A DNA stretch of 64,000 bases, taken from the sequence record NC_070950.1; one strand, written 5' to 3'. Positions within the stretch are counted from its first letter, which is position 1. Each line of letters starts with the position of its first letter. Under the pieces are notes generated by a model. That model saw only the letters and a program-made list of their open reading frames with translations. It ran no database searches and was not told the origin of the DNA. The position numbers were made by a program, and so were the translations under genes. Below are positions 8,572 to 35,243 of this stretch, in pieces.

Positions 8572-9222
8572 ATGTTTAAGAAAGATCTCTCACTCACTCA
8601 ACTCAATGATCTGGCGGCGATCAATTTTCTGGTAACTGTTCCTCTGGAAGTTAAATTGATCAGCAATCTTTACGGCGAGATGGAACGTATTTGGGGTCAG
8701 ATGCGCGATCAATATGGTGAGCATCTCATCGAACGTAATCTCGGTGGCGGTGTCAAATCCGACGGCGTAAGAGATTATGCCGAGAAACTCACCGTTCTCG
8801 TTTTTAACTCCATCGGGTCGTTCCAGCGCGGCTTGTCGAAGAAAACCATCAGTGATAAGAATGATGAGGCGACAACGCTCATTCGTCGCGTACCGGCGTA
8901 CACCGATCTGACAAACGAAAAACTTTTCAAGATCTTCATGATCAACCTCTTCGGTTACGACGAAGATCTTATCGCAATCTCTTTTGCGACTAACGATAAA
9001 GATCGTAGCAAACTGCTCTTCCGCTACATCCTCAATCGTTTTGACATCGTTCGTAACAATCCTGAGTCCGAAGAACTTATGGAAGGTTTCTATCCTGATA
9101 ACTTCTTCGAGATCGTTGCCGAAAGACCAAGCGACGTTTATCAGGAATGTTTCGCGTACATCGTAGAACAGGGTTATCCGGTCATGAAAGCGCTGCAGTA
9201 CTACGCGTCCTCATTACGCTAA
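8572..9222 (+). CDS. Hypothetical protein, 216 aa
   Basis: ORF with a plausible start; no motif recognised. Confidence 0.7.
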   Translation: MFKKDLSLTQLNDLAAINFLVTVPLEVKLISNLYGEMERIWGQMRDQYGEHLIERNLGGGVKSDGVRDYAEKLTVLVFNSIGSFQRGLSKKTISDKNDEATTLIRRVPAYTDLTNEKLFKIFMINLFGYDEDLIAISFATNDKDRSKLLFRYILNRFDIVRNNPESEELMEGFYPDNFFEIVAERPSDVYQECFAYIVEQGYPVMKALQYYASSLR

Positions 9223-9355
9223 AAGTTTTAAGACCTATATAACTAAGGTGAGGCAAACACAGACAAGACAGTCTGGGTGATGTTGTAACATCATCTTTTT
9301 GTTTCCTCATCTTTCTTATTTTTTTAACATCCAATTTATTATCGAGGACCGAAGA

Positions 9356-9799
9356 GTGAGCAAACTTAACAAAACTTATGCTGAATCCCAAACTGCCGCT
9401 ATTGCCAATCTGACCGAACACGCGAGCTACGACAAAGCAACGGCGCACACTACCTTTTCAGCAGAAAAGTTTTCTTTGCCTGAAGGGGTAACCCCTGAAA
9501 GTATTAAGACGCACAAAGATCTCTTCATTGACATCACCGGTGCAATCGAAGAAGCTACCGCGCAACAAACGCTGGCTGCTCATAAAGCCGATGAAAAAAT
9601 TCTCACCACCACAGGTTCTCTGGAACTGGGCGGGGTCGTCTTTACCTCTCAGCACCACCTGAAACAAAAAGTAGGCGAACACGATCTGTTCGGCGGGAGC
9701 GTGACCAGCGTCGATTATATCTATTCTCCTGAAGCGACCGAATGGGCGGCAAGCATGCGCGCCAATAACGCGAGTATCGCCGAAGATCTTTTTAAATAA
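9356..9799 (+). CDS. Hypothetical protein (probable GTG start, MSKLNKTY...)
   Basis: GAGG RBS upstream of GTG 9356; preceded by a TATATA-type promoter motif near 9235; followed by a terminator. Confidence 0.7.
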   Translation: MSKLNKTYAESQTAAIANLTEHASYDKATAHTTFSAEKFSLPEGVTPESIKTHKDLFIDITGAIEEATAQQTLAAHKADEKILTTTGSLELGGVVFTSQHHLKQKVGEHDLFGGSVTSVDYIYSPEATEWAASMRANNASIAEDLFK

Positions 9800-9806
9800 G
9801 GCATTC

Positions 9807-9852
9807 TTACTCCTGCCCTTAGGGCAGGAGTAAATAAGGCGTTTTATTTTTT
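9807..9852 (+). terminator. Intrinsic terminator
   Basis: Stem TTACTCCTGCCC-TTA-GGGCAGGAGTAA, then a T-rich tract. Confidence 0.75.
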
Positions 9853-9869
9853 TAGGGGAAGAAAGTAGA

Positions 9870-10148
9870 ATGGCTTCTAAGTCAACCACAAGAATCTACG
9901 AACTTGCTGATGGTGGGATTCGGATTGGGTTTGTGAGAAATGAAGGATCGATCAAGGTTAAGGTAGAGCAGTTTGACCGAGAGCGCAAACTCATGAATCT
10001 GTATGGCGCAACCATCCATATTTTAGAAAAAGCGGGCGCCATCACTGAACTAAGAAAAGTATTAGGTAAACAATTTCCGCGTTGGGGATTCGACATGAAT
10101 CCCGAAGCAAAGGAAGACATCGTGCTTACTTTTATCAAATTGTTCTAG
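9870..10148 (+). CDS. Hypothetical protein, 92 aa
   Basis: ORF with purine-rich RBS, followed by a hairpin near 10158. Confidence 0.65.
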   Translation: MASKSTTRIYELADGGIRIGFVRNEGSIKVKVEQFDRERKLMNLYGATIHILEKAGAITELRKVLGKQFPRWGFDMNPEAKEDIVLTFIKLF

Positions 10149-10249
10149 TATTTTATGGTAGGGGTGCTTTAGGCACTCCTACTGGACTCATCGTGCATTT
10201 TAATTCAACACACAAAAAGAATGAGACCTGTACTATTTAAGTAAGAACA

Positions 10250-10951
10250 ATGATAGGAGTTGCTTTCATGGATTCAATAAGCTGGTACGGAAAATTTAAA
10301 GCAGTAACCGAGGATTTGATTCCGGTTGATCTTTTACGGTACTGCTTATGGTCGATCACCTTTAATGACAAAGCGCATGATTTGAATCACGTTTATCATG
10401 TTTGTAAACAAGGGAACGATCTTGCATTATTACAAGATTACGATGACCACTGGCGAAGCCTAGTATTGGCGGGTTGTCTGCTTCACGACATTGGGTGTCG
10501 TTACGATCGTAAAACCCATCATCTCATAGCGTATGGGTTGGTCTTCGACTTAACCCATCGTTATTGCACTGGACACTATTCGCCGGAAGAGACATTGATC
10601 ATTGCGAAAAGTTGTCTGGAGCACAGAGCAAGCTGGGAAGGTGATTTCAGTCATCCTATTTCAGAAACGGTTGCTCTGGCCGACAGAGGTATTCCTGATT
10701 TCGAGTTATACTGCAAACGAGCCGTTCAGTTCAGGTTAGATCAAAACCTGACTGAAGATGTTTTGGTAGAAGAAGTTCGCGTTCACATGTTAGACAAGTT
10801 CCTACCTAAGACGGGATACGTTTGGAAAAACTATCCTGAATTAGGATTGTCTTTATATGAACAAGAATGGAAAGTGTTCCACGATAAACTTAAAGACGAA
10901 GTTGTCTTTAGAGAGGCTGTACTAGAAGCGTACCGTAAATTAAAATCTTAA
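10250..10951 (+). CDS. HD-domain metal-dependent phosphohydrolase
   Basis: Ordered H...HD...H...D motifs: AHDLNH, CLLHDIG, LEHRAS, ALADRG. Confidence 0.8.
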   Translation: MIGVAFMDSISWYGKFKAVTEDLIPVDLLRYCLWSITFNDKAHDLNHVYHVCKQGNDLALLQDYDDHWRSLVLAGCLLHDIGCRYDRKTHHLIAYGLVFDLTHRYCTGHYSPEETLIIAKSCLEHRASWEGDFSHPISETVALADRGIPDFELYCKRAVQFRLDQNLTEDVLVEEVRVHMLDKFLPKTGYVWKNYPELGLSLYEQEWKVFHDKLKDEVVFREAVLEAYRKLKS

Positions 10952-30899: not shown

Positions 30900-32030
30900 C
30901 TGGAGAAATTTCCGTCTCGATAAAAATTCAACTGAGAATTTTTACTCTGGGGTTTTCGGCGGTTATAATATTTCACTGCGGGAATTTAAAAACTCAACGG
31001 GTTTACGATCCCGTATGTTTTTGAGTTTTATTTCCCGTATAAAATACTCCGTGCCGTAAGACAACACCCCACAGAAAAAACCTCGCCTCCGGAAAAAATT
31101 CCTCGAAGGCGAGTTGCCATGATCTCACTCGAGCAAGAATCAATCCGACATACAATCCCAAGTGCTCCGATTTTTTTCTTCGGAATTTTGGTCGTTGGTA
31201 AATTTTTACATACAAATCTATTTTATATTTGTATTTTTCGCGTGCGCGGATATTCTAAATTTTCAAAGATAATCTAAAACCGATTCCGGTTCTGGGTTTT
31301 TATTTTTTCTGTGTTTTGATTTTCCAAATCCAATTTTCAAAAATCTAAATCTAAAAAATCTAAAATTTTAATACTCAAAAATCCAATTTTCCTAGGGGTC
31401 CTTATTACGCGTGCGTACGCCCGCACGCATATAAAAAATAAATATAATACGTAGTATTATATTTTCATTTGGTTTTATATTTTTAATTTATTAAAAATAT
31501 ATTAATATAAATTATTATAAATATTTTTATTAGTTTGTTTTTATAAAATATATATAAATATATATTTATATATATTTATATTCATTAGGCGCGCGCCAGC
31601 GCGTGTGTGCATGTGCGTGCGCGCACGCGTAATAGAGAAGGGGTTATAAAAATACAAGATTGACCCTGAGAGATTATCCAGAAAAAATCACACAGAGTAA
31701 AAATATTAACCGGAATGATTTTGAGAAGATTTAATACTCAACCTAGGAATTCGTATCAGTCGGATGAAAAAACGTTTTAGAAATCGATACAGGAATTTTT
31801 AGAGGGTATCCCGATCGAGTTCTCAGGAAAGATTATTCGGAGAATAAAAATATTTTAATCAAGATAATTAATTTTTACGGTAAGTTAGATTTATCGAGAC
31901 GAGAAGATTTAATCACAAAGTAATTTCTTACGGAGTAAATAATCTTCTGAACAGGACCGAGATCTCGAATAGCCAGATGGAAATTATCCATCCATTCGAA
32001 AGTTAACCTGAATTATCCCTAAGAGGCGAT
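30900..32030. other. 1.1-kb non-coding region, candidate replication origin or other cis-acting DNA site
   Basis: Near-pure AT core (about 31430-31585) with a 32-bp perfect palindrome; 13-bp inverted repeats at 31403 and 31622; AAATCT/AGATTT motif clusters on either side; no credible ORF. Confidence 0.5.
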
Positions 32031-32035
32031 ATCCT

Positions 32036-32770
32036 ATGCAACCAGCTAACCCATGGAAAAACAACAAGCACGTTAAATCACAAGACTCAGCAAGTGTTGA
32101 TCGTTACGAATCCCTGTTACAAGAATTACCTGATGCGTTGAATGCAACCCCTCGAGATCCCGGATATCTTATAGCGACTAAAAAGATTTTATTAGTCCTG
32201 GAAATGTCTGAAGGAACCCGACTGACCGTTCGCAACGTGATGGAAAATCCAGACATGATTCGTAAGGTCCACGAGTTGCTGGTGGAGTTAGGCTGGAAGC
32301 AAGCGATTAGCCGAGGGACTCAGGTTTTCGTCACTCACCAGGATTTAATTAAACCGAGTATCTACCGCTTAATCGACCTCGACGCTAATGGGATTGGTTA
32401 CGCTAACGAACTGCTGAATAATATTTTATTAGACCGTCGGTTCAGTGCTCGGGTAGACAATAACGATATTCGAATCCTCCCAGGAGACCGCAGCGCAAGT
32501 AACCCCTTTAGCCTGCTGTCGTCTAACGTCGTCAGTGGTTGGCGTAAAGCCATACGGGATTACGACAAAAACGTGACGGGTAATCTTATTGGACACATGA
32601 CGGTTGTCGGCGAAGACAATACGAATATCCCGCTTGATTTAAAACTGGTTTTCGCTCTGCTGGATTACATCGGGTGGCCAGAAATGTATTTTACTGGCGA
32701 ACAGATTTTATTGAGTAACCCCATTGGGGATTATCAGACCCTTGAGGTGAATTTCATCGACCCTGAGTAA
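32036..32770 (+). CDS. Hypothetical protein, 244 aa
   Basis: GAGG RBS; clean ORF. Confidence 0.75.
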   Translation: MQPANPWKNNKHVKSQDSASVDRYESLLQELPDALNATPRDPGYLIATKKILLVLEMSEGTRLTVRNVMENPDMIRKVHELLVELGWKQAISRGTQVFVTHQDLIKPSIYRLIDLDANGIGYANELLNNILLDRRFSARVDNNDIRILPGDRSASNPFSLLSSNVVSGWRKAIRDYDKNVTGNLIGHMTVVGEDNTNIPLDLKLVFALLDYIGWPEMYFTGEQILLSNPIGDYQTLEVNFIDPE

Positions 32771-33020
32771 TTCCTAACGACAGAGTGATGTTATTAGTAA
32801 AGATCTTTGGACTCCCTGTTGATTAACTAGCGACCCAACCTCATCTCTTTGAACCTCCTTACCACGAGCGAGATAGCCAAAGTAGCTAGAGATTTTCAGG
32901 GGGTTCAATCCCCATTATTCGTTAATCTTATTAGACCCATTGTCCTTAGCCATGTAGCGACGGCCATTCTCCTGTGACAGACAAGTTTTTGTTCAATGGG
33001 ATAGATTAACGTTTTTCTTC

Positions 33021-33097
33021 ACGTCGTGTTATCTGATGAGTCTTCGACGCTAAACAAGACGAAACCTAATGAATCTATTTTATTAGGTCATAATTCA
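33021..33097 (+). ncRNA. Type I hammerhead ribozyme, predicted cleavage after C33089 (GUC)
   Basis: Core CUGAUGA 33033-39 and GAAA 33061-64; stem II GUCUU/AAGAC; stem III ACCUAAU/AUUAGGU; stem I GUUAU/AUAAU; 5-bp pseudoknot of CGUCG 33022-26 with loop II CGACG 33045-49. Confidence 0.85.
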
Positions 33098-33640
33098 ACC
33101 TAAGCGTTGAACGGGCAGTTAGGGGCAATGGTCCCCGAGGTCTTCAGCTTCTTCGCCTGCCCGCACTAAAAAAGTTCTTTCATGATTAGGAGTGCCGCAC
33201 TCTACGAGCGGACAATAAGCAACCGAAAGTGGGAGAGAAAGAAGCGTGTCTGGTCGCTTGCCGGAAAGTTGGTTCAGGCGGGTTTCTTCCCAACCCAAAC
33301 GACGCTGCCCAAGATAGGGCTGCAAGTCGTATTAGCGAATTATACCGGTATGCGGGGTTTCCGCGATAAACCGGGTTAGCTACGGGTAAGAAACCGGCCG
33401 GAGTAATCAGCCTTTCGTATTCGGGTAACGTGAGTTATTGTAGAGATATCTCTGAGGGTTAGGCCAACCCCCGACGTTCTCCGAGTCCGAAGGGAAGCTT
33501 GCTCAGCTTCGTAGGAACTCCAAAATCTCAGACGGTCACACCTCGCAATCTTACGGCAGTATGATTGCCTATTCGTCCTTTGTCGCTCACCAAGGGGCGA
33601 GTAGGAAACCTCTGCCACGGCGTTTCGTTTGCCTTTTACC
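33090..33640 (+). ncRNA. Putative large structured non-coding RNA of unknown family
   Basis: Dense GC-rich nested helices (e.g. CGGGCAG 33112 / CTGCCCG 33157, GGGAGAGAAA / TTTCTTCCC, ACGAC/GTCGT, TCTGAG/CTCAGA, TCGCTC/GGGCGA) with no credible ORF. Confidence 0.55.
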
Positions 33641-33760
33641 ATTGCTTTTGTTATAACCTCTCTGTTTGAGTTGAGTGTTAACTTCCCCAAGAGTATAACC
33701 TGTTATCTCTCTCTTCGTGAGGAGTCGGAGATAATGGGGTAAATTCTTAGGAGGTTCGTT

Positions 33761-33949
33761 ATGTACACATACCAGTATACCGTGCGATACCGAATACCTA
33801 ATTCTGTGTTTACGACTTACAGCGGAGAAATTACTTCTGACTGTTTGCTCACTAACGCTAATCGCATCTTTGACGTTTTGCGCACTGAGGTTCATAAAGC
33901 TACTAACGTTAACTCGTTTAGCATTACGAACTTTAAGCTGAAAGAATAA
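33761..33949 (+). CDS. Small protein, 62 aa
   Basis: Strong AGGAGG RBS before the ATG; lies between two structured non-coding segments. Confidence 0.7.
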   Translation: MYTYQYTVRYRIPNSVFTTYSGEITSDCLLTNANRIFDVLRTEVHKATNVNSFSITNFKLKE

Positions 33950-34150
33950 GTCGAGCTACGCGCTCAACCTACCTTAGGGCCGGAAGTAGTTACGACTTAG
34001 GGGGAAAGAAGAGTCGTGCCTTTAAGTACCCCAACCCCATTCGTGTGGTGATCTTTCACATCATCCCATGAATATCGCCACATCATCATTAAAGTTCTAC
34101 CATGAATTTTTATTCCTTCCAGTAGGGTTCGGCCCTACTGGACTTTTTTC
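33950..34150 (+). ncRNA. Putative structured RNA segment ending in an intrinsic terminator
   Basis: Hairpins GAGC/GCTC, CTAC/GTAG, ACGACT/AGTCGT, TGTGGTGAT/ATCGCCACA; terminator TCCAGTAGGG-TTCGG-CCCTACTGGA-T6 at 34118-34149. Confidence 0.4.
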
Positions 34151-34280: not shown

Positions 34281-35243
34281 ATGAGTACATTACGTGTTTA
34301 CGCGTGCGGCGGTACTGGTATTAATATTGCGTCTAAATGGATTGCCACCGGTGCGAATACGCTTATTCGTAAAGCCCAGTTCATTGGACTGGATAGCAGT
34401 GAAAACAACAAACCGTATAACGACGCCTTTAAGGTCGAACGTCCTGAAGGAACTCGTGGCGGTGGCAAAGAACGTAAGCTGATCGGTAAAATCGCTGCTG
34501 GGTTTATTGACAGTATTTTGACCAAACATAAACCGGGCGATTTCAACCTGATCATCATGAACGCGGCTGGCGCTACCGGGAGTACATTCGGCCCGACTCT
34601 GATCAACCGTCTTCTCTCTCAGGGCGTTCCGGTCATTGCGCTGGTCGTAGGCGACCTGACTTCTGAACTGGAAAACTACAACACGGTTAAAACGTTTGAA
34701 AGCTTGGACAACCAGCGCATCAATCTGAACGTACCGGTTATCATCGACTACGTGGACAACGCCAAATATCCCAGCCGCGGGTTGGCTGACAAATATGCCA
34801 TCGGCCGTCTTGATATCCTGAGCCTGTTCTTAACCGACGAACATGAAGAAAGCGATTTCCAAGACATCCGGAACCTGTTCTATTACAACCAGGTTACCAA
34901 GGCGGCGCCTACTCTTGCTCGTATCGACTTCTTGACCGATACTCAGTTAGACAACGTTACTCCGGGGCTGGTTGCTGAATTTGGTTTGTATCGTAAAGCG
35001 GACGATATCGGCAGCCATATTAAAAATCTGGCATACCGTTCGACCGGCGTTATTCAGGAAGGCAGCACTAACTTCCCAGCTGGAATAGAACATCTCCACA
35101 TGGTCTTTGATCATGATGCGACGATCAAAGATATCCTGGTTCTGGTTCAGGATCTTAAAGATATCGAGATCCAAAATAACGAACGTTTTAAATCTGCCCA
35201 GCAGGTTGGAAACGGCGGCGATGATTCTGGAATGTCCTACTAA
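34281..35243 (+). CDS. phuZ: PhuZ phage tubulin
   Basis: YACGGTGINI (T1 loop), NAAGATGST variant tubulin signature, acidic C-terminal tail DDSGMSY; 320 aa. Confidence 0.9.
   Translation: MSTLRVYACGGTGINIASKWIATGANTLIRKAQFIGLDSSENNKPYNDAFKVERPEGTRGGGKERKLIGKIAAGFIDSILTKHKPGDFNLIIMNAAGATGSTFGPTLINRLLSQGVPVIALVVGDLTSELENYNTVKTFESLDNQRINLNVPVIIDYVDNAKYPSRGLADKYAIGRLDILSLFLTDEHEESDFQDIRNLFYYNQVTKAAPTLARIDFLTDTQLDNVTPGLVAEFGLYRKADDIGSHIKNLAYRSTGVIQEGSTNFPAGIEHLHMVFDHDATIKDILVLVQDLKDIEIQNNERFKSAQQVGNGGDDSGMSY

What the first reader, a model, noticed from the sequence alone, without database searches (positions are those of the whole stretch)
33021..33111. Complete hammerhead ribozyme in an intergenic locus of a nucleus-forming jumbo phage
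Seen in sequence: all hammerhead core nucleotides are present (C3-U4-G5-A6-U7-G8-A9 at 33033-39, G12-A13-A14-A15.1 at 33061-64, cleavage triplet GUC at 33087-89). So are stem II (GUCUU/AAGAC), a 7-10 bp stem III, a 5-bp stem I and a 5-bp pseudoknot between loop II (CGACG) and the 5' tail (CGUCG). A second ACCUAA at 33098-103 can pair with the UUAGGU strand of stem III, an alternative fold that would switch cleavage off; that copy can itself be sequestered by the hairpin UUCAAC/GUUGAA (33094-111). Established: type I hammerheads self-cleave after NUH, leaving a 2',3'-cyclic phosphate and a 5'-OH. Inference: the ribozyme matures the 5' end of the large structured RNA downstream, giving a 5'-OH end that resists 5'-monophosphate-stimulated RNase E decay. 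This could be an undescribed ribozyme-processed RNA system in Chimalliviridae.
Basis: partly seen in the sequence, partly recalled or inferred. Interest (0 to 1): 0.88.

Follow-up and report, generated by a model that had tools for sequence, protein, structure and literature searches.

The report
Hammerhead ribozyme in jumbo-phage leader RNA
A self-cutting RNA (a type I hammerhead ribozyme) really is encoded in a 1-kb non-coding stretch upstream of a small gene and the tubulin gene phuZ of Klebsiella jumbo phage Miami; it is kept, with compensating base changes, in four distantly related phage lineages, and most likely trims a long folded leader RNA to a defined 5' end. This is a well-supported new example of a known kind of phage ribozyme, not a new kind of system.

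Summary
Window 33021-33094 (+) holds every hammerhead core nucleotide, three stems (I 5 bp, II 5 bp, III 9 bp) and a 5-bp pseudoknot. It is the only such site in the whole 253-kb genome of Klebsiella phage Miami. No motif this good appeared in 1500 shuffles.

The ribozyme recurs at the same place, upstream of a 62-67-aa ORF and phuZ, in three more lineages whose PhuZ is only 47-74% identical. Seven base pairs change on both sides, spread over all four helices. The only core changes are at N7 and H17, the two positions known to tolerate change.

It lies inside a conserved non-coding locus. About 250 nt of upstream RNA precede it. A 350-670-nt structured leader follows and runs into the small ORF gp270. 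The 3' cleavage product begins with a hairpin 4-7 nt from the cut in every lineage where that stretch can be read.

The best reading is co-transcriptional self-cleavage that insulates and matures the 5' end of the leader-gp270 RNA. Cleavage itself and its function are untested.

The element is confined to Miami-like phages and is single-copy, so it is not a Chimalliviridae-wide system. Type I hammerheads in phage intergenic regions are already known. Interest is moderate.

The parts
32787..32950 (+). Conserved upstream non-coding block (region A), part of the presumed 5' cleavage product
   Evidence: 0-4 differences per 50 nt within the Miami group, against 10-12 in the adjacent gene gp267. 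No frame-specific protein similarity to other lineages.
32853..32865 (+). 13-mer ACCUCCUUACCAC. Its first 9 nt equal the anti-Shine-Dalgarno end of 16S rRNA (from memory).
   Evidence: Identical in Miami, L065 and L008 while the flanks differ. Unpaired in the minimum-energy fold of all three. Unique in the Miami genome. Absent from L081.
33021..33094 (+). Type I hammerhead ribozyme, whole motif including the pseudoknot 5' strand
33022..33026 (+). Pseudoknot 5' strand CGUCG, pairs with 33045-33049 in loop II
   Evidence: G33026-C33045 becomes U-A in L008. Four central pairs are invariant. One pair is lost in L065.
33028..33032 (+). Stem I, 5' strand
   Evidence: Pairs with 33090-94. Three of 5 pairs change on both sides across lineages.
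33033..33039 (+). Core C3-U4-G5-A6-U7-G8-A9
   Evidence: Invariant in six distinct sequences, except U7 to C in L066, the known variable position.
33040..33060 (+). Stem II (33040-44/33056-60) with its 11-nt loop, which carries the pseudoknot 3' strand at 33045-49
   Evidence: U-A becomes C-G in L081. 100% of cells are paired.
33061..33064 (+). Core G12-A13-A14 and A15.1
   Evidence: Invariant in all lineages.
33065..33087 (+). Stem III hairpin (9 bp, 5-nt loop)
   Evidence: Two pairs change on both sides. Pairing probability 1.0.
33088..33089 (+). U16.1 and C17. The predicted cut is between C33089 and A33090.
   Evidence: C17 in five sequences and A17 in L081; both are allowed (H).
33090..33094 (+). 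Stem I, 3' strand, which is the first bases of the 3' product
33094..33111 (+). Hairpin P-a, the first structure of the 3' cleavage product
   Evidence: A 5-6-bp hairpin starts 4-7 nt after the cut in Miami, L008 and L081, with unrelated stem sequences. L065 is identical to Miami as far as the contig goes.
33112..33760 (+). Structured leader RNA (region B). It includes hairpin P-b (33249-54/33260-65), helix X (33568-82/33591-605) and hairpin Z (33703-13/33724-34), which ends in UAAUGG ahead of the ribosome-binding site.
   Evidence: Fold z-score is -4.6 on + and -2.3 on -. Variants within the Miami group are 10 compatible to 2 breaking on +, and 5 to 8 on -. Helix X is 15/15 bp in four sequences, with at least 6 covarying pairs. 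Hairpin Z is present in all four lineages.
33761..33949 (+). gp270, a 62-aa ORF conserved as a protein in all lineages, always between the leader and phuZ
   Evidence: AlphaFold model has pLDDT 92.5 and a beta-beta-alpha-beta fold.
34118..34150 (+). Intrinsic-terminator-like hairpin plus U tract, the likely 3' end of the unit
   Evidence: An equivalent hairpin plus U tract is at L008 1262-1300.
34281..35243 (+). phuZ (tubulin), the syntenic anchor used to find relatives

Best explanation
The element is a genuine type I hammerhead ribozyme, held in shape by a pseudoknot between loop II and the RNA just 5' of stem I. It sits inside a + strand transcript of about 1.3 kb that runs from just after gp267 to the terminator at about 34150.

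As the RNA is made, the ribozyme cuts between C33089 and A33090.
- The 5' piece is about 250-300 nt. It carries region A and the whole ribozyme body and ends in a 2',3'-cyclic phosphate.
- The 3' piece starts with a 5'-OH and four free bases, then hairpin P-a, then a 650-nt folded leader, then the small ORF gp270.

Cleavage frees the leader from whatever lies upstream, so that it folds the same way every time. It also gives the gp270 RNA a fixed end capped by a hairpin, which should be a poor substrate for decay that depends on the 5' end. The layout is a natural counterpart of the synthetic 'ribozyme plus hairpin' insulator RiboJ.

Shown here: the motif, its uniqueness in the genome, its conservation and covariation, the structured + strand leader, and the conserved 5' hairpin.

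Inferred: transcription across the site, cleavage in vivo, the insulating or stabilising purpose, and what the leader and gp270 do.
For: - Motif complete and beyond chance.
- Four lineages keep it at the same place. These are the Miami group; L065 with L007, which come from the same sample and are taken as one phage (PhuZ 74% identical); L008 (49%); and L081 (47%).
- On six distinct sequences, 93.1% of cells are paired and 7 pairs change on both sides: pseudoknot 1, stem I 3, stem II 1, stem III 2. No shuffle of 500 reaches this, and slid controls give at most 2.
- Core changes occur only at N7 (L066) and H17 (L081).
- Hammerhead nucleotide identity between lineages is 82-85% (Miami against L008 and L065), against 61-72% for the flanking genes.
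- Within the Miami group, 33000-33600 is nearly invariant while gp267 differs at 20-24% of sites.
- The leader is structured on the + strand, with covarying helices X, P-b and Z.
- A hairpin lies 4-7 nt from the new 5' end in all three lineages where that stretch can be compared.
- Published precedent: phage and prophage hammerheads are thought to process long transcripts, and about 40% use a stem I/II pseudoknot (PMC3088659).
- 55 IMG/VR phage contigs carry type I hammerheads with the same stem II sequence just upstream of genes.
Against: - There are no expression data. Promoter, transcript ends and cleavage are all unobserved.
- A terminator-like hairpin at 32899-32913 lies between region A and the ribozyme in the Miami group. 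It might end some transcripts before the ribozyme.
- Nested-structure energy models do not favour the hammerhead fold: -13.0 kcal/mol with the P-a hairpin included (-9.2 for stems I-III alone), against -21.9 for the minimum-energy fold. This is usual for pseudoknotted three-way junctions.
- Stem I is short and AU-rich, and has a U.U mismatch in L081.
- The pseudoknot rests on a single covarying pair and loses one pair in L065.
- The covariation alignment for stems I-III was fitted to the model's structure.
- Only six distinct sequences from four lineages are available.
Confidence: 0.7

Rival explanations
1. The point of the cut is the upstream piece. The ribozyme defines the 3' end of a small RNA of about 250-300 nt (region A plus the ribozyme body, ending in a cyclic phosphate). 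An exposed anti-Shine-Dalgarno-like loop on that RNA would pair with ribosome-binding sites, either gp270's own or others. This does not exclude the best explanation.
For: - In a type I hammerhead the catalytic body stays on the 5' product.
- Region A is as conserved as the leader.
- In L008 the neighbouring upstream gene is on the other strand, so region A is not a 3' UTR there.
- The 13-mer is identical in three lineages and unpaired in each minimum-energy fold.
- Its best duplex partner within the Miami downstream RNA is the gp270 ribosome-binding region, at -19.2 kcal/mol.
Against: - The 13-mer is absent from the fourth lineage, L081.
- No comparable pairing site exists near the gp270 start in L007.
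- Any Shine-Dalgarno sequence pairs with such a motif by definition.
- A 9-mer is expected about twice by chance in 253 kb counted on both strands.
- The stems around the loop are weak and do not visibly covary.
Confidence: 0.15
2. The ribozyme is a regulated switch. An alternative pairing of the stem III 3' strand with ACCUAA 33098-103, or a bound factor, would turn cleavage off, so that the cut controls gp270 expression.
For: The complementary hexamers exist. The leader is long and structured enough to hold a sensor. The gp270 ribosome-binding site is paired in the minimum-energy folds.
Against: The alternative helix evaluates at +0.5 kcal/mol and has pairing probability 0.0, while stem III has 1.0. 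Only 4 of its 6 bases are kept in L008 and none in L081, with no covariation. No riboswitch family matches.
Confidence: 0.06
3. The motif is a relic or a chance look-alike with no catalytic role, and its conservation reflects some other constraint on the DNA or RNA.
For: It falls below Rfam gathering scores. Cleavage is untested.
Against: No shuffle of 1500 matches it. The substitution pattern follows hammerhead rules exactly: the core is fixed except N7 and H17, and there are 7 compensated pairs. Control phage hammerheads also fail Rfam gathering.
Confidence: 0.04
4. It belongs to a selfish or circular-RNA element (retrozyme- or viroid-like) that has lodged upstream of phuZ.
For: Type I hammerheads are typical of repeats and selfish elements (PMC3088659). 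The locus is missing from other Chimalliviridae phuZ regions.
Against: There is a single ribozyme per genome and no second cleavage site. No flanking repeats were found, and no reverse transcriptase or mobility gene lies beside it. Synteny with gp270 and phuZ is stable across deep divergence.
Confidence: 0.02

Closest known systems
Type I hammerhead ribozymes of phages and prophages with a stem I / stem II pseudoknot (Perreault et al. 2011, PMC3088659)
   Same: Same core, same open-stem-I topology, and a pseudoknot in place of loop-loop contacts. Intergenic position in a phage on the coding strand. Presumed role in cutting long phage transcripts.
   Different: Here it lies 350-670 nt, not tens of nt, upstream of the next ORF. 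It is flanked on both sides by conserved structured RNA, is single-copy, and is in a nucleus-forming jumbo phage. I found no paper linking self-cleaving ribozymes with this family.
The IMG/VR phage type I hammerhead class 'CUGAUGA-GUCUU...AAGAC-GAAAC' (55 contigs)
   Same: Identical stem II sequence (GUCUU/AAGAC), a 5-6-bp open stem I, and a hairpin stem III.
   Different: Those have a fixed 8-nt loop II and sit just upstream of a ribosome-binding site and start codon. Miami has an 11-13-nt loop II that pairs with the 5' tail, and a long leader. No flank similarity was seen.
Rfam RF03152 RAGATH-1-hammerhead and RF00008 Hammerhead_3
   Same: Best Rfam matches. The RAGATH-1 alignment has the same type I register.
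   Different: Scores are 19 and 23.7 bits against gathering scores of 56.3 and 48.5. The Hammerhead_3 alignment forces a wrong (permuted) topology.
RiboJ, the synthetic insulator made of a hammerhead followed by a hairpin in a 5' UTR (from memory, not checked here)
   Same: A ribozyme immediately followed by a hairpin, which removes upstream sequence and leaves a hairpin-capped 5'-OH leader.
   Different: RiboJ is engineered, uses a type III satellite-RNA ribozyme, and sits next to the ribosome-binding site. Here the arrangement is natural, type I, and followed by a 350-670-nt folded leader.
glmS ribozyme (a 5'-UTR self-cleaving ribozyme that sets mRNA fate through its 5'-OH end; from memory)
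   Same: A self-cleaving RNA in the leader of an mRNA, where the nature of the new 5' end matters.
   Different: It is a different fold, is ligand-dependent, and its cleavage destabilises the mRNA. No ligand domain or switch is evident here.

Membership tests
Hammerhead ribozyme | Core strand C3-U4-G5-A6-N7-G8-A9 | tested here: met
   CUGAUGA at 33033-39. Invariant in six distinct sequences except N7 (U to C in L066).
Hammerhead ribozyme | Core strand G12-A13-A14 and the A15.1-U16.1 pair | tested here: met
   GAAA at 33061-64. A33064 pairs with U33088. Invariant in all lineages.
Hammerhead ribozyme | Cleavage-site nucleotide H17 (any base but G) | tested here: met
   C33089 (GUC). L081 has A (GUA).
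Hammerhead ribozyme | Three helices around the core, with canonical pairs next to the core and supported by covariation | tested here: met
   Stems I, II and III have 5, 5 and 9 bp. G10.1-C11.1 and U2.1-A1.1 are canonical. Six double changes fall in stems I-III. 93.1% of cells are paired; 0/500 shuffles reach this.
Hammerhead ribozyme | [quoted passage not shown] | tested here: inconclusive
   A 5-bp pseudoknot (33022-26/33045-49) sits at the same spacing in all lineages. One pair changes on both sides (L008) and one pair is lost in L065. The four central pairs never vary, so they say nothing.
Hammerhead ribozyme | Score at or above an Rfam hammerhead model's gathering threshold | tested here: not met
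   Best scores are 23.7 bits (RF00008, threshold 48.5) and 19 bits (RF03152, threshold 56.3). Control: three loci with canonical IMG/VR phage type I hammerheads also give no gathering match, so this is a limit of the models.
Hammerhead ribozyme | Mg2+-dependent self-cleavage that gives 2',3'-cyclic phosphate and 5'-OH ends | not testable with these tools
Type I topology | Stem I open (5' and 3' ends), stems II and III closed by loops | tested here: met
   The type II and III descriptors find nothing here.
Phage gene-proximal type I hammerheads (IMG/VR class) | Position just upstream of a ribosome-binding site and start codon; fixed 8-nt loop II | tested here: not met
   The distance to the gp270 start is 671 nt in Miami, 351 in L008 and 523 in L081. 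Loop II is 11-13 nt.
Ligand- or fold-switched ribozyme | A conserved alternative pairing, or an aptamer, that competes with the active fold | tested here: not met
   The alternative helix evaluates at +0.5 kcal/mol with probability 0.0 and is not conserved. No riboswitch match.
Known large structured RNAs (Rfam families such as GOLLD, ROOL, group I/II introns, RNase P, tmRNA) for the leader | Match to the family covariance model | tested here: not met
   No match with E up to 10 other than the hammerhead and four chance-level hits. No tRNA or tmRNA.

The most novel reading that the evidence does not exclude
The hammerhead may be only the processing site of an undescribed two-part RNA device specific to Miami-like Chimalliviridae. 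One part would be a released small RNA that displays a 16S-like anti-Shine-Dalgarno loop. The other would be a 350-670-nt multi-domain leader RNA with no Rfam relative. Together with the small gp270 protein, whose fold weakly resembles ribosomal protein LX, they would control translation or RNA fate for a phage whose transcription is walled off from ribosomes.
Probability: 0.12. Interest if true: 0.8.

Novelty: new member of a known kind. Interest (0 to 1): 0.5.

Why it matters
As far as the searchable literature shows, this would be the first self-cleaving ribozyme documented in a nucleus-forming jumbo phage. It comes with unusually good comparative support for a small clade. It marks a conserved, unannotated RNA locus next to phuZ; two spurious ORFs are annotated over it in the reference genome. 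It offers a natural example of the 'ribozyme plus hairpin' insulator design used in synthetic biology. It also shows that Rfam's hammerhead models miss a common class of phage type I hammerheads. It does not change what is known about hammerhead chemistry or about phage ribozymes in general.

Tried and rejected
- Rfam at gathering and at E up to 10 gave only sub-threshold hammerhead matches and nothing for the leader.
- ARAGORN found no tRNA or tmRNA.
- PhuZ relatives in IMG/VR: none.
- Hammerhead-pattern scans found nothing in IMG/VR, only one Miami-like contig in JGI metagenomes, and nothing in GTDB genomes.
- The leader hairpin pattern found nothing in IMG/VR and six hits in GTDB genomes. 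About four are expected by chance, and none shares further similarity.
- PhuZ-upstream regions of Aphrodite1, PDCC-1 and RisingSun hold no hammerhead, no gp270 and no similar RNA.
- Protein-coding reading of the locus is rejected: only short hits in several frames and both strands, which mirror nucleotide identity.
- A minus-strand gene behind the strong reverse-complement ribosome-binding site of the 13-mer is rejected: there is no conserved ORF (read directly from the sequences).
- A centromere or iteron-like DNA element is rejected: no repeat families.
- Pfam, PHROGs, NCBIfam and PDB sequence searches gave nothing for gp267 or gp270.
- MAFFT could not align helix X across lineages. A covariance model of it recovered L007 only weakly (14.2 bits) and missed L008. 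The helix X, P-a, P-b and Z comparisons therefore rest on my own registers, checked by script.
- Cis pairing of the 13-mer with the gp270 ribosome-binding site is strong in Miami, moderate in L008 and absent in L007, so it stays unexplained.

Full report
**Identity of the window.** The region is 100% identical to Klebsiella phage Miami (NC_070950.1); window position equals record position minus 189,383. Miamivirus is placed in Chimalliviridae in the NCBI taxonomy. It is also used as a distant relative of phage RAY in the core-genome paper on nucleus-forming phages (PMC10299810). The finding lies in a 990-nt gap between gp267 (32036-32770) and a 62-aa ORF, gp270 (33761-33949). The tubulin gene phuZ follows at 34281-35243, and all three genes are on the + strand.

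**The observation.**
- Core: CUGAUGA 33033-39, GAAA 33061-64, U33088-C33089.
- Stems: stem II 33040-44/33056-60, stem III 33065-73/33079-87 (9 bp), stem I 33028-32/33090-94 (5 bp).
- Pseudoknot: CGUCG 33022-26 with CGACG 33045-49 in loop II.

A descriptor search finds this as the only hit in the window. In the entire 253-kb genome, scanned for all three hammerhead topologies, it is the only hit with stems this long. None of 1500 dinucleotide shuffles of the window produced a motif with stems of at least 5/5/7 bp. Stems of at least 4/3/4 bp arose 0.0013 times per window.

Rfam reports nothing at gathering score and only weak matches in E-value mode (Hammerhead_3 23.7 bits, RAGATH-1-hammerhead 19 bits). 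As a control, I scanned three IMG/VR loci that carry canonical phage type I hammerheads. They also fail to reach gathering, so the Rfam result is a limit of the models and not evidence against the motif.

**Relatives.** GenBank holds only close relatives: YC1, phiKp_32 and BUCTxx100 at 99%, and KPN8 and VB_ZK_P1 at 93%. One JGI metagenome contig and two Logan contigs are of the same group. Within this group, 33000-33600 shows 0-4 differences per 50 nt (mostly 0-2). The adjacent gene gp267 shows 10-12, and short spacers (32950-33000, 33600-33700) show up to 15.

More distant lineages came from protein searches with the neighbouring genes.
- PhuZ at 74% identity: L007, from sample SRR11192622. 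The contig starts inside the leader.
- PhuZ at 49% identity: L008.
- A 39%-identical gp267 homologue from the same sample as L007: L065, whose last 100 nt are the hammerhead. I treat L065 and L007 as one phage.
- A profile search with gp270 gave a 67-aa homologue on contig L081, followed by a PhuZ that is 46.7% identical to Miami's.

The hammerhead is found at the equivalent place in each lineage, by nhmmer, by eye, or by a covariance model built from the first three lineages (L081 796-902, 51.3 bits, E 2e-12).

**Covariation.** I counted pairs on six distinct sequences aligned to the model (A9).
- 93.1% of cells form standard pairs.
- Seven pairs change on both sides: one in the pseudoknot, three in stem I, one in stem II, two in stem III.
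- No shuffle of 500 reaches the observed values, and sliding the 3' partners by 1-3 columns gives at most 2 such pairs.

Caveats: stems I-III were aligned with a model that contains them (the pseudoknot was not in the model), there are only four lineages, and shuffles ignore relatedness.

The core is invariant except U7 to C in L066 and C17 to A in L081. These are the two positions where natural hammerheads vary. Hammerhead identity between lineages (Miami against L008 and L065) is 82-85%, against 61-72% for phuZ, gp270 and gp267 DNA. Taken together, this is a real hammerhead under selection.

**Surroundings.**
- The downstream 530 nt fold better than shuffles on the + strand (z -4.6) than on the - strand (z -2.3). 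The L008 and L081 leaders give z -4.65 and -2.9.
- Within the Miami group, substitutions that fall in pairs predicted from Miami alone are 10 compatible to 2 breaking on +, and 5 to 8 on -.
- Across lineages, several helices recur with different sequences. P-a is a hairpin that starts 4-7 nt after the cut, seen in Miami, L008 and L081. P-b is a 6-bp hairpin with loop CGCUY. Helix X is 15/15 bp in Miami, L066, L007 and L008, with at least six covarying pairs. Hairpin Z has the form UUA...UAA followed by UGG, and lies 27-47 nt before the gp270 start in all four lineages. These registers are mine, checked by script, because MAFFT and a small covariance model could not align them.
- No frame-specific protein similarity exists in the locus, whereas gp270 is conserved as a protein.
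- The leader matches no Rfam family.
- Upstream of the ribozyme there is a second conserved block (32787-32950).
- A strong terminator follows gp270 at 34118-34150.

The unit is therefore: upstream RNA, hammerhead, 5' hairpin, long structured leader, small ORF, terminator, with phuZ behind it.

**Mechanism.** Type I topology means that the ribozyme body stays on the 5' product. The 3' product keeps only the 5-nt strand of stem I. Hairpin P-a overlaps that strand by 1-2 nt, and its formation should help release. The 3' product would begin with a 5'-OH, 3-6 free bases and a hairpin.

I infer that the cut insulates the leader from upstream sequence and fixes a protected 5' end for the leader-gp270 RNA. 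However, 5'-OH protection is only partial, because RNase E also uses direct entry (PMC4191395).

The alternative helix evaluates at +0.5 kcal/mol and has pairing probability 0.0, against 1.0 for stem III. It is also not conserved.

**Scope.** There is one copy per genome. The phuZ regions of Aphrodite1, PDCC-1 and RisingSun hold no counterpart. This is a feature of a Miami-like subclade, not of Chimalliviridae as a whole.

**Comparison with what is known.** Hammerheads of all three topologies are common in phages and prophages. They are thought to process polycistronic transcripts, and about 40% use a stem I/II pseudoknot (PMC3088659). A pattern scan found 55 IMG/VR contigs with type I hammerheads that share Miami's stem II sequence, placed just upstream of ribosome-binding sites. 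Three features are new here: the host family (no paper in the library links self-cleaving ribozymes with jumbo or nucleus-forming phages), the long conserved structured RNAs on both sides, and the deep conservation with gp270 and phuZ.

**Unexplained.**
- A 13-mer at 32853-65 is identical in three lineages. Its first nine bases equal the 3' end of 16S rRNA (my knowledge). It is unpaired in each minimum-energy fold but absent from L081. Pairing with the gp270 ribosome-binding region is strong only in Miami.
- gp270 is modelled confidently (pLDDT 92.5). It resembles archaeal ribosomal protein LX only weakly: TM-scores normalised to the query of 0.61-0.72 across the LX/eL20 hits, and a best Foldseek E-value of 0.025.

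**Verdict.** This is a new, well-supported member of a known kind, and interest is moderate (0.5).

Noticed in passing
window 32853-32865; L065 1505-1517; L008 470-482: The 13-mer ACCUCCUUACCAC is identical in three lineages. Its first nine bases equal the anti-Shine-Dalgarno 3' end of 16S rRNA (from memory). It is predicted single-stranded, unique in the Miami genome, and absent from the fourth lineage, L081.
   Followed up: partly
window 33761-33949 (gp270): A conserved 62-67-aa protein always lies between the leader RNA and phuZ. The AlphaFold model (pLDDT 92.5) has a beta-beta-alpha-beta fold. Its best PDB matches are archaeal and eukaryotic ribosomal protein LX/eL20 (TM-scores normalised to the query of 0.61-0.72, best E 0.025), which is not significant.
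   Followed up: partly
window 33119-33298 and 33376-33690 (- strand); L081 740-1297 (- strand): The ORFs annotated as 'hypothetical protein' (gp268 and gp269 in the RefSeq record, and a 185-aa call in L081) lie on the strand opposite the conserved structured RNA and the hammerhead. They are not annotated in YC1, phiKp_32, BUCTxx100 or VB_ZK_P1, and are probably spurious.
   Followed up: partly
window 32899-32913: The hairpin GGGGGUUCAAUCCCC has a tRNA T-arm-like loop and is flagged as terminator-like. It lies in a stretch of about 120 nt between the 13-mer and the hammerhead that is present only in the Miami group.
   Followed up: no
window 31200-31700: A very AT-rich stretch (GC 0.20-0.30) lies between divergently oriented genes. 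Only tiny ORFs are annotated there. It may be a promoter cluster or an origin-like region.
   Followed up: no
window 33319-33331 / 33811-33823 and 33408-33424 / 33790-33806: Two nested long-range complementarities (13 nt at 92%, 17 nt at 76%) link the leader with the first third of the gp270 coding sequence. TTACGACTTA is also repeated at 33810 and 33990.
   Followed up: no
window 33972-33982; L008 about 1146-1156; L007 about 450-460: The motif CCUUAGG(G/A)CCG is conserved just after the gp270 stop codon, in an otherwise diverged 3' region ahead of the terminator.
   Followed up: no
L009-L063 (IMG/VR contigs): 55 viral contigs carry type I hammerheads of the form CUGAUGA-GUCUU-(8 nt)-AAGAC-GAAAC just upstream of a ribosome-binding site. 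Some contigs hold 2-3 copies. Three that I tested do not reach any Rfam hammerhead gathering score.
   Followed up: partly
NC_070950.1 85722-86111 (outside the window); also 8976-10697 and 169907-171397: The Miami genome is annotated with a small 'RNA ligase' (gp080, 129 aa) and two 'ribonuclease' genes. Enzymes of this kind could act on 2',3'-cyclic-phosphate or 5'-OH ends.
   Followed up: no
L070 (OR529409.1): 'Stenotrophomonas phage BUCTxx100' is 99% identical to Klebsiella phage Miami over this locus and has an identical PhuZ. That is an odd host label for so close a relative.
   Followed up: no
window 32036-32770 (gp267): The gene just upstream differs at 20-24% of sites within the Miami group, while the non-coding RNA next to it is almost invariant. 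It is linked to the locus in two of four lineages and has no family or structure match.
   Followed up: partly
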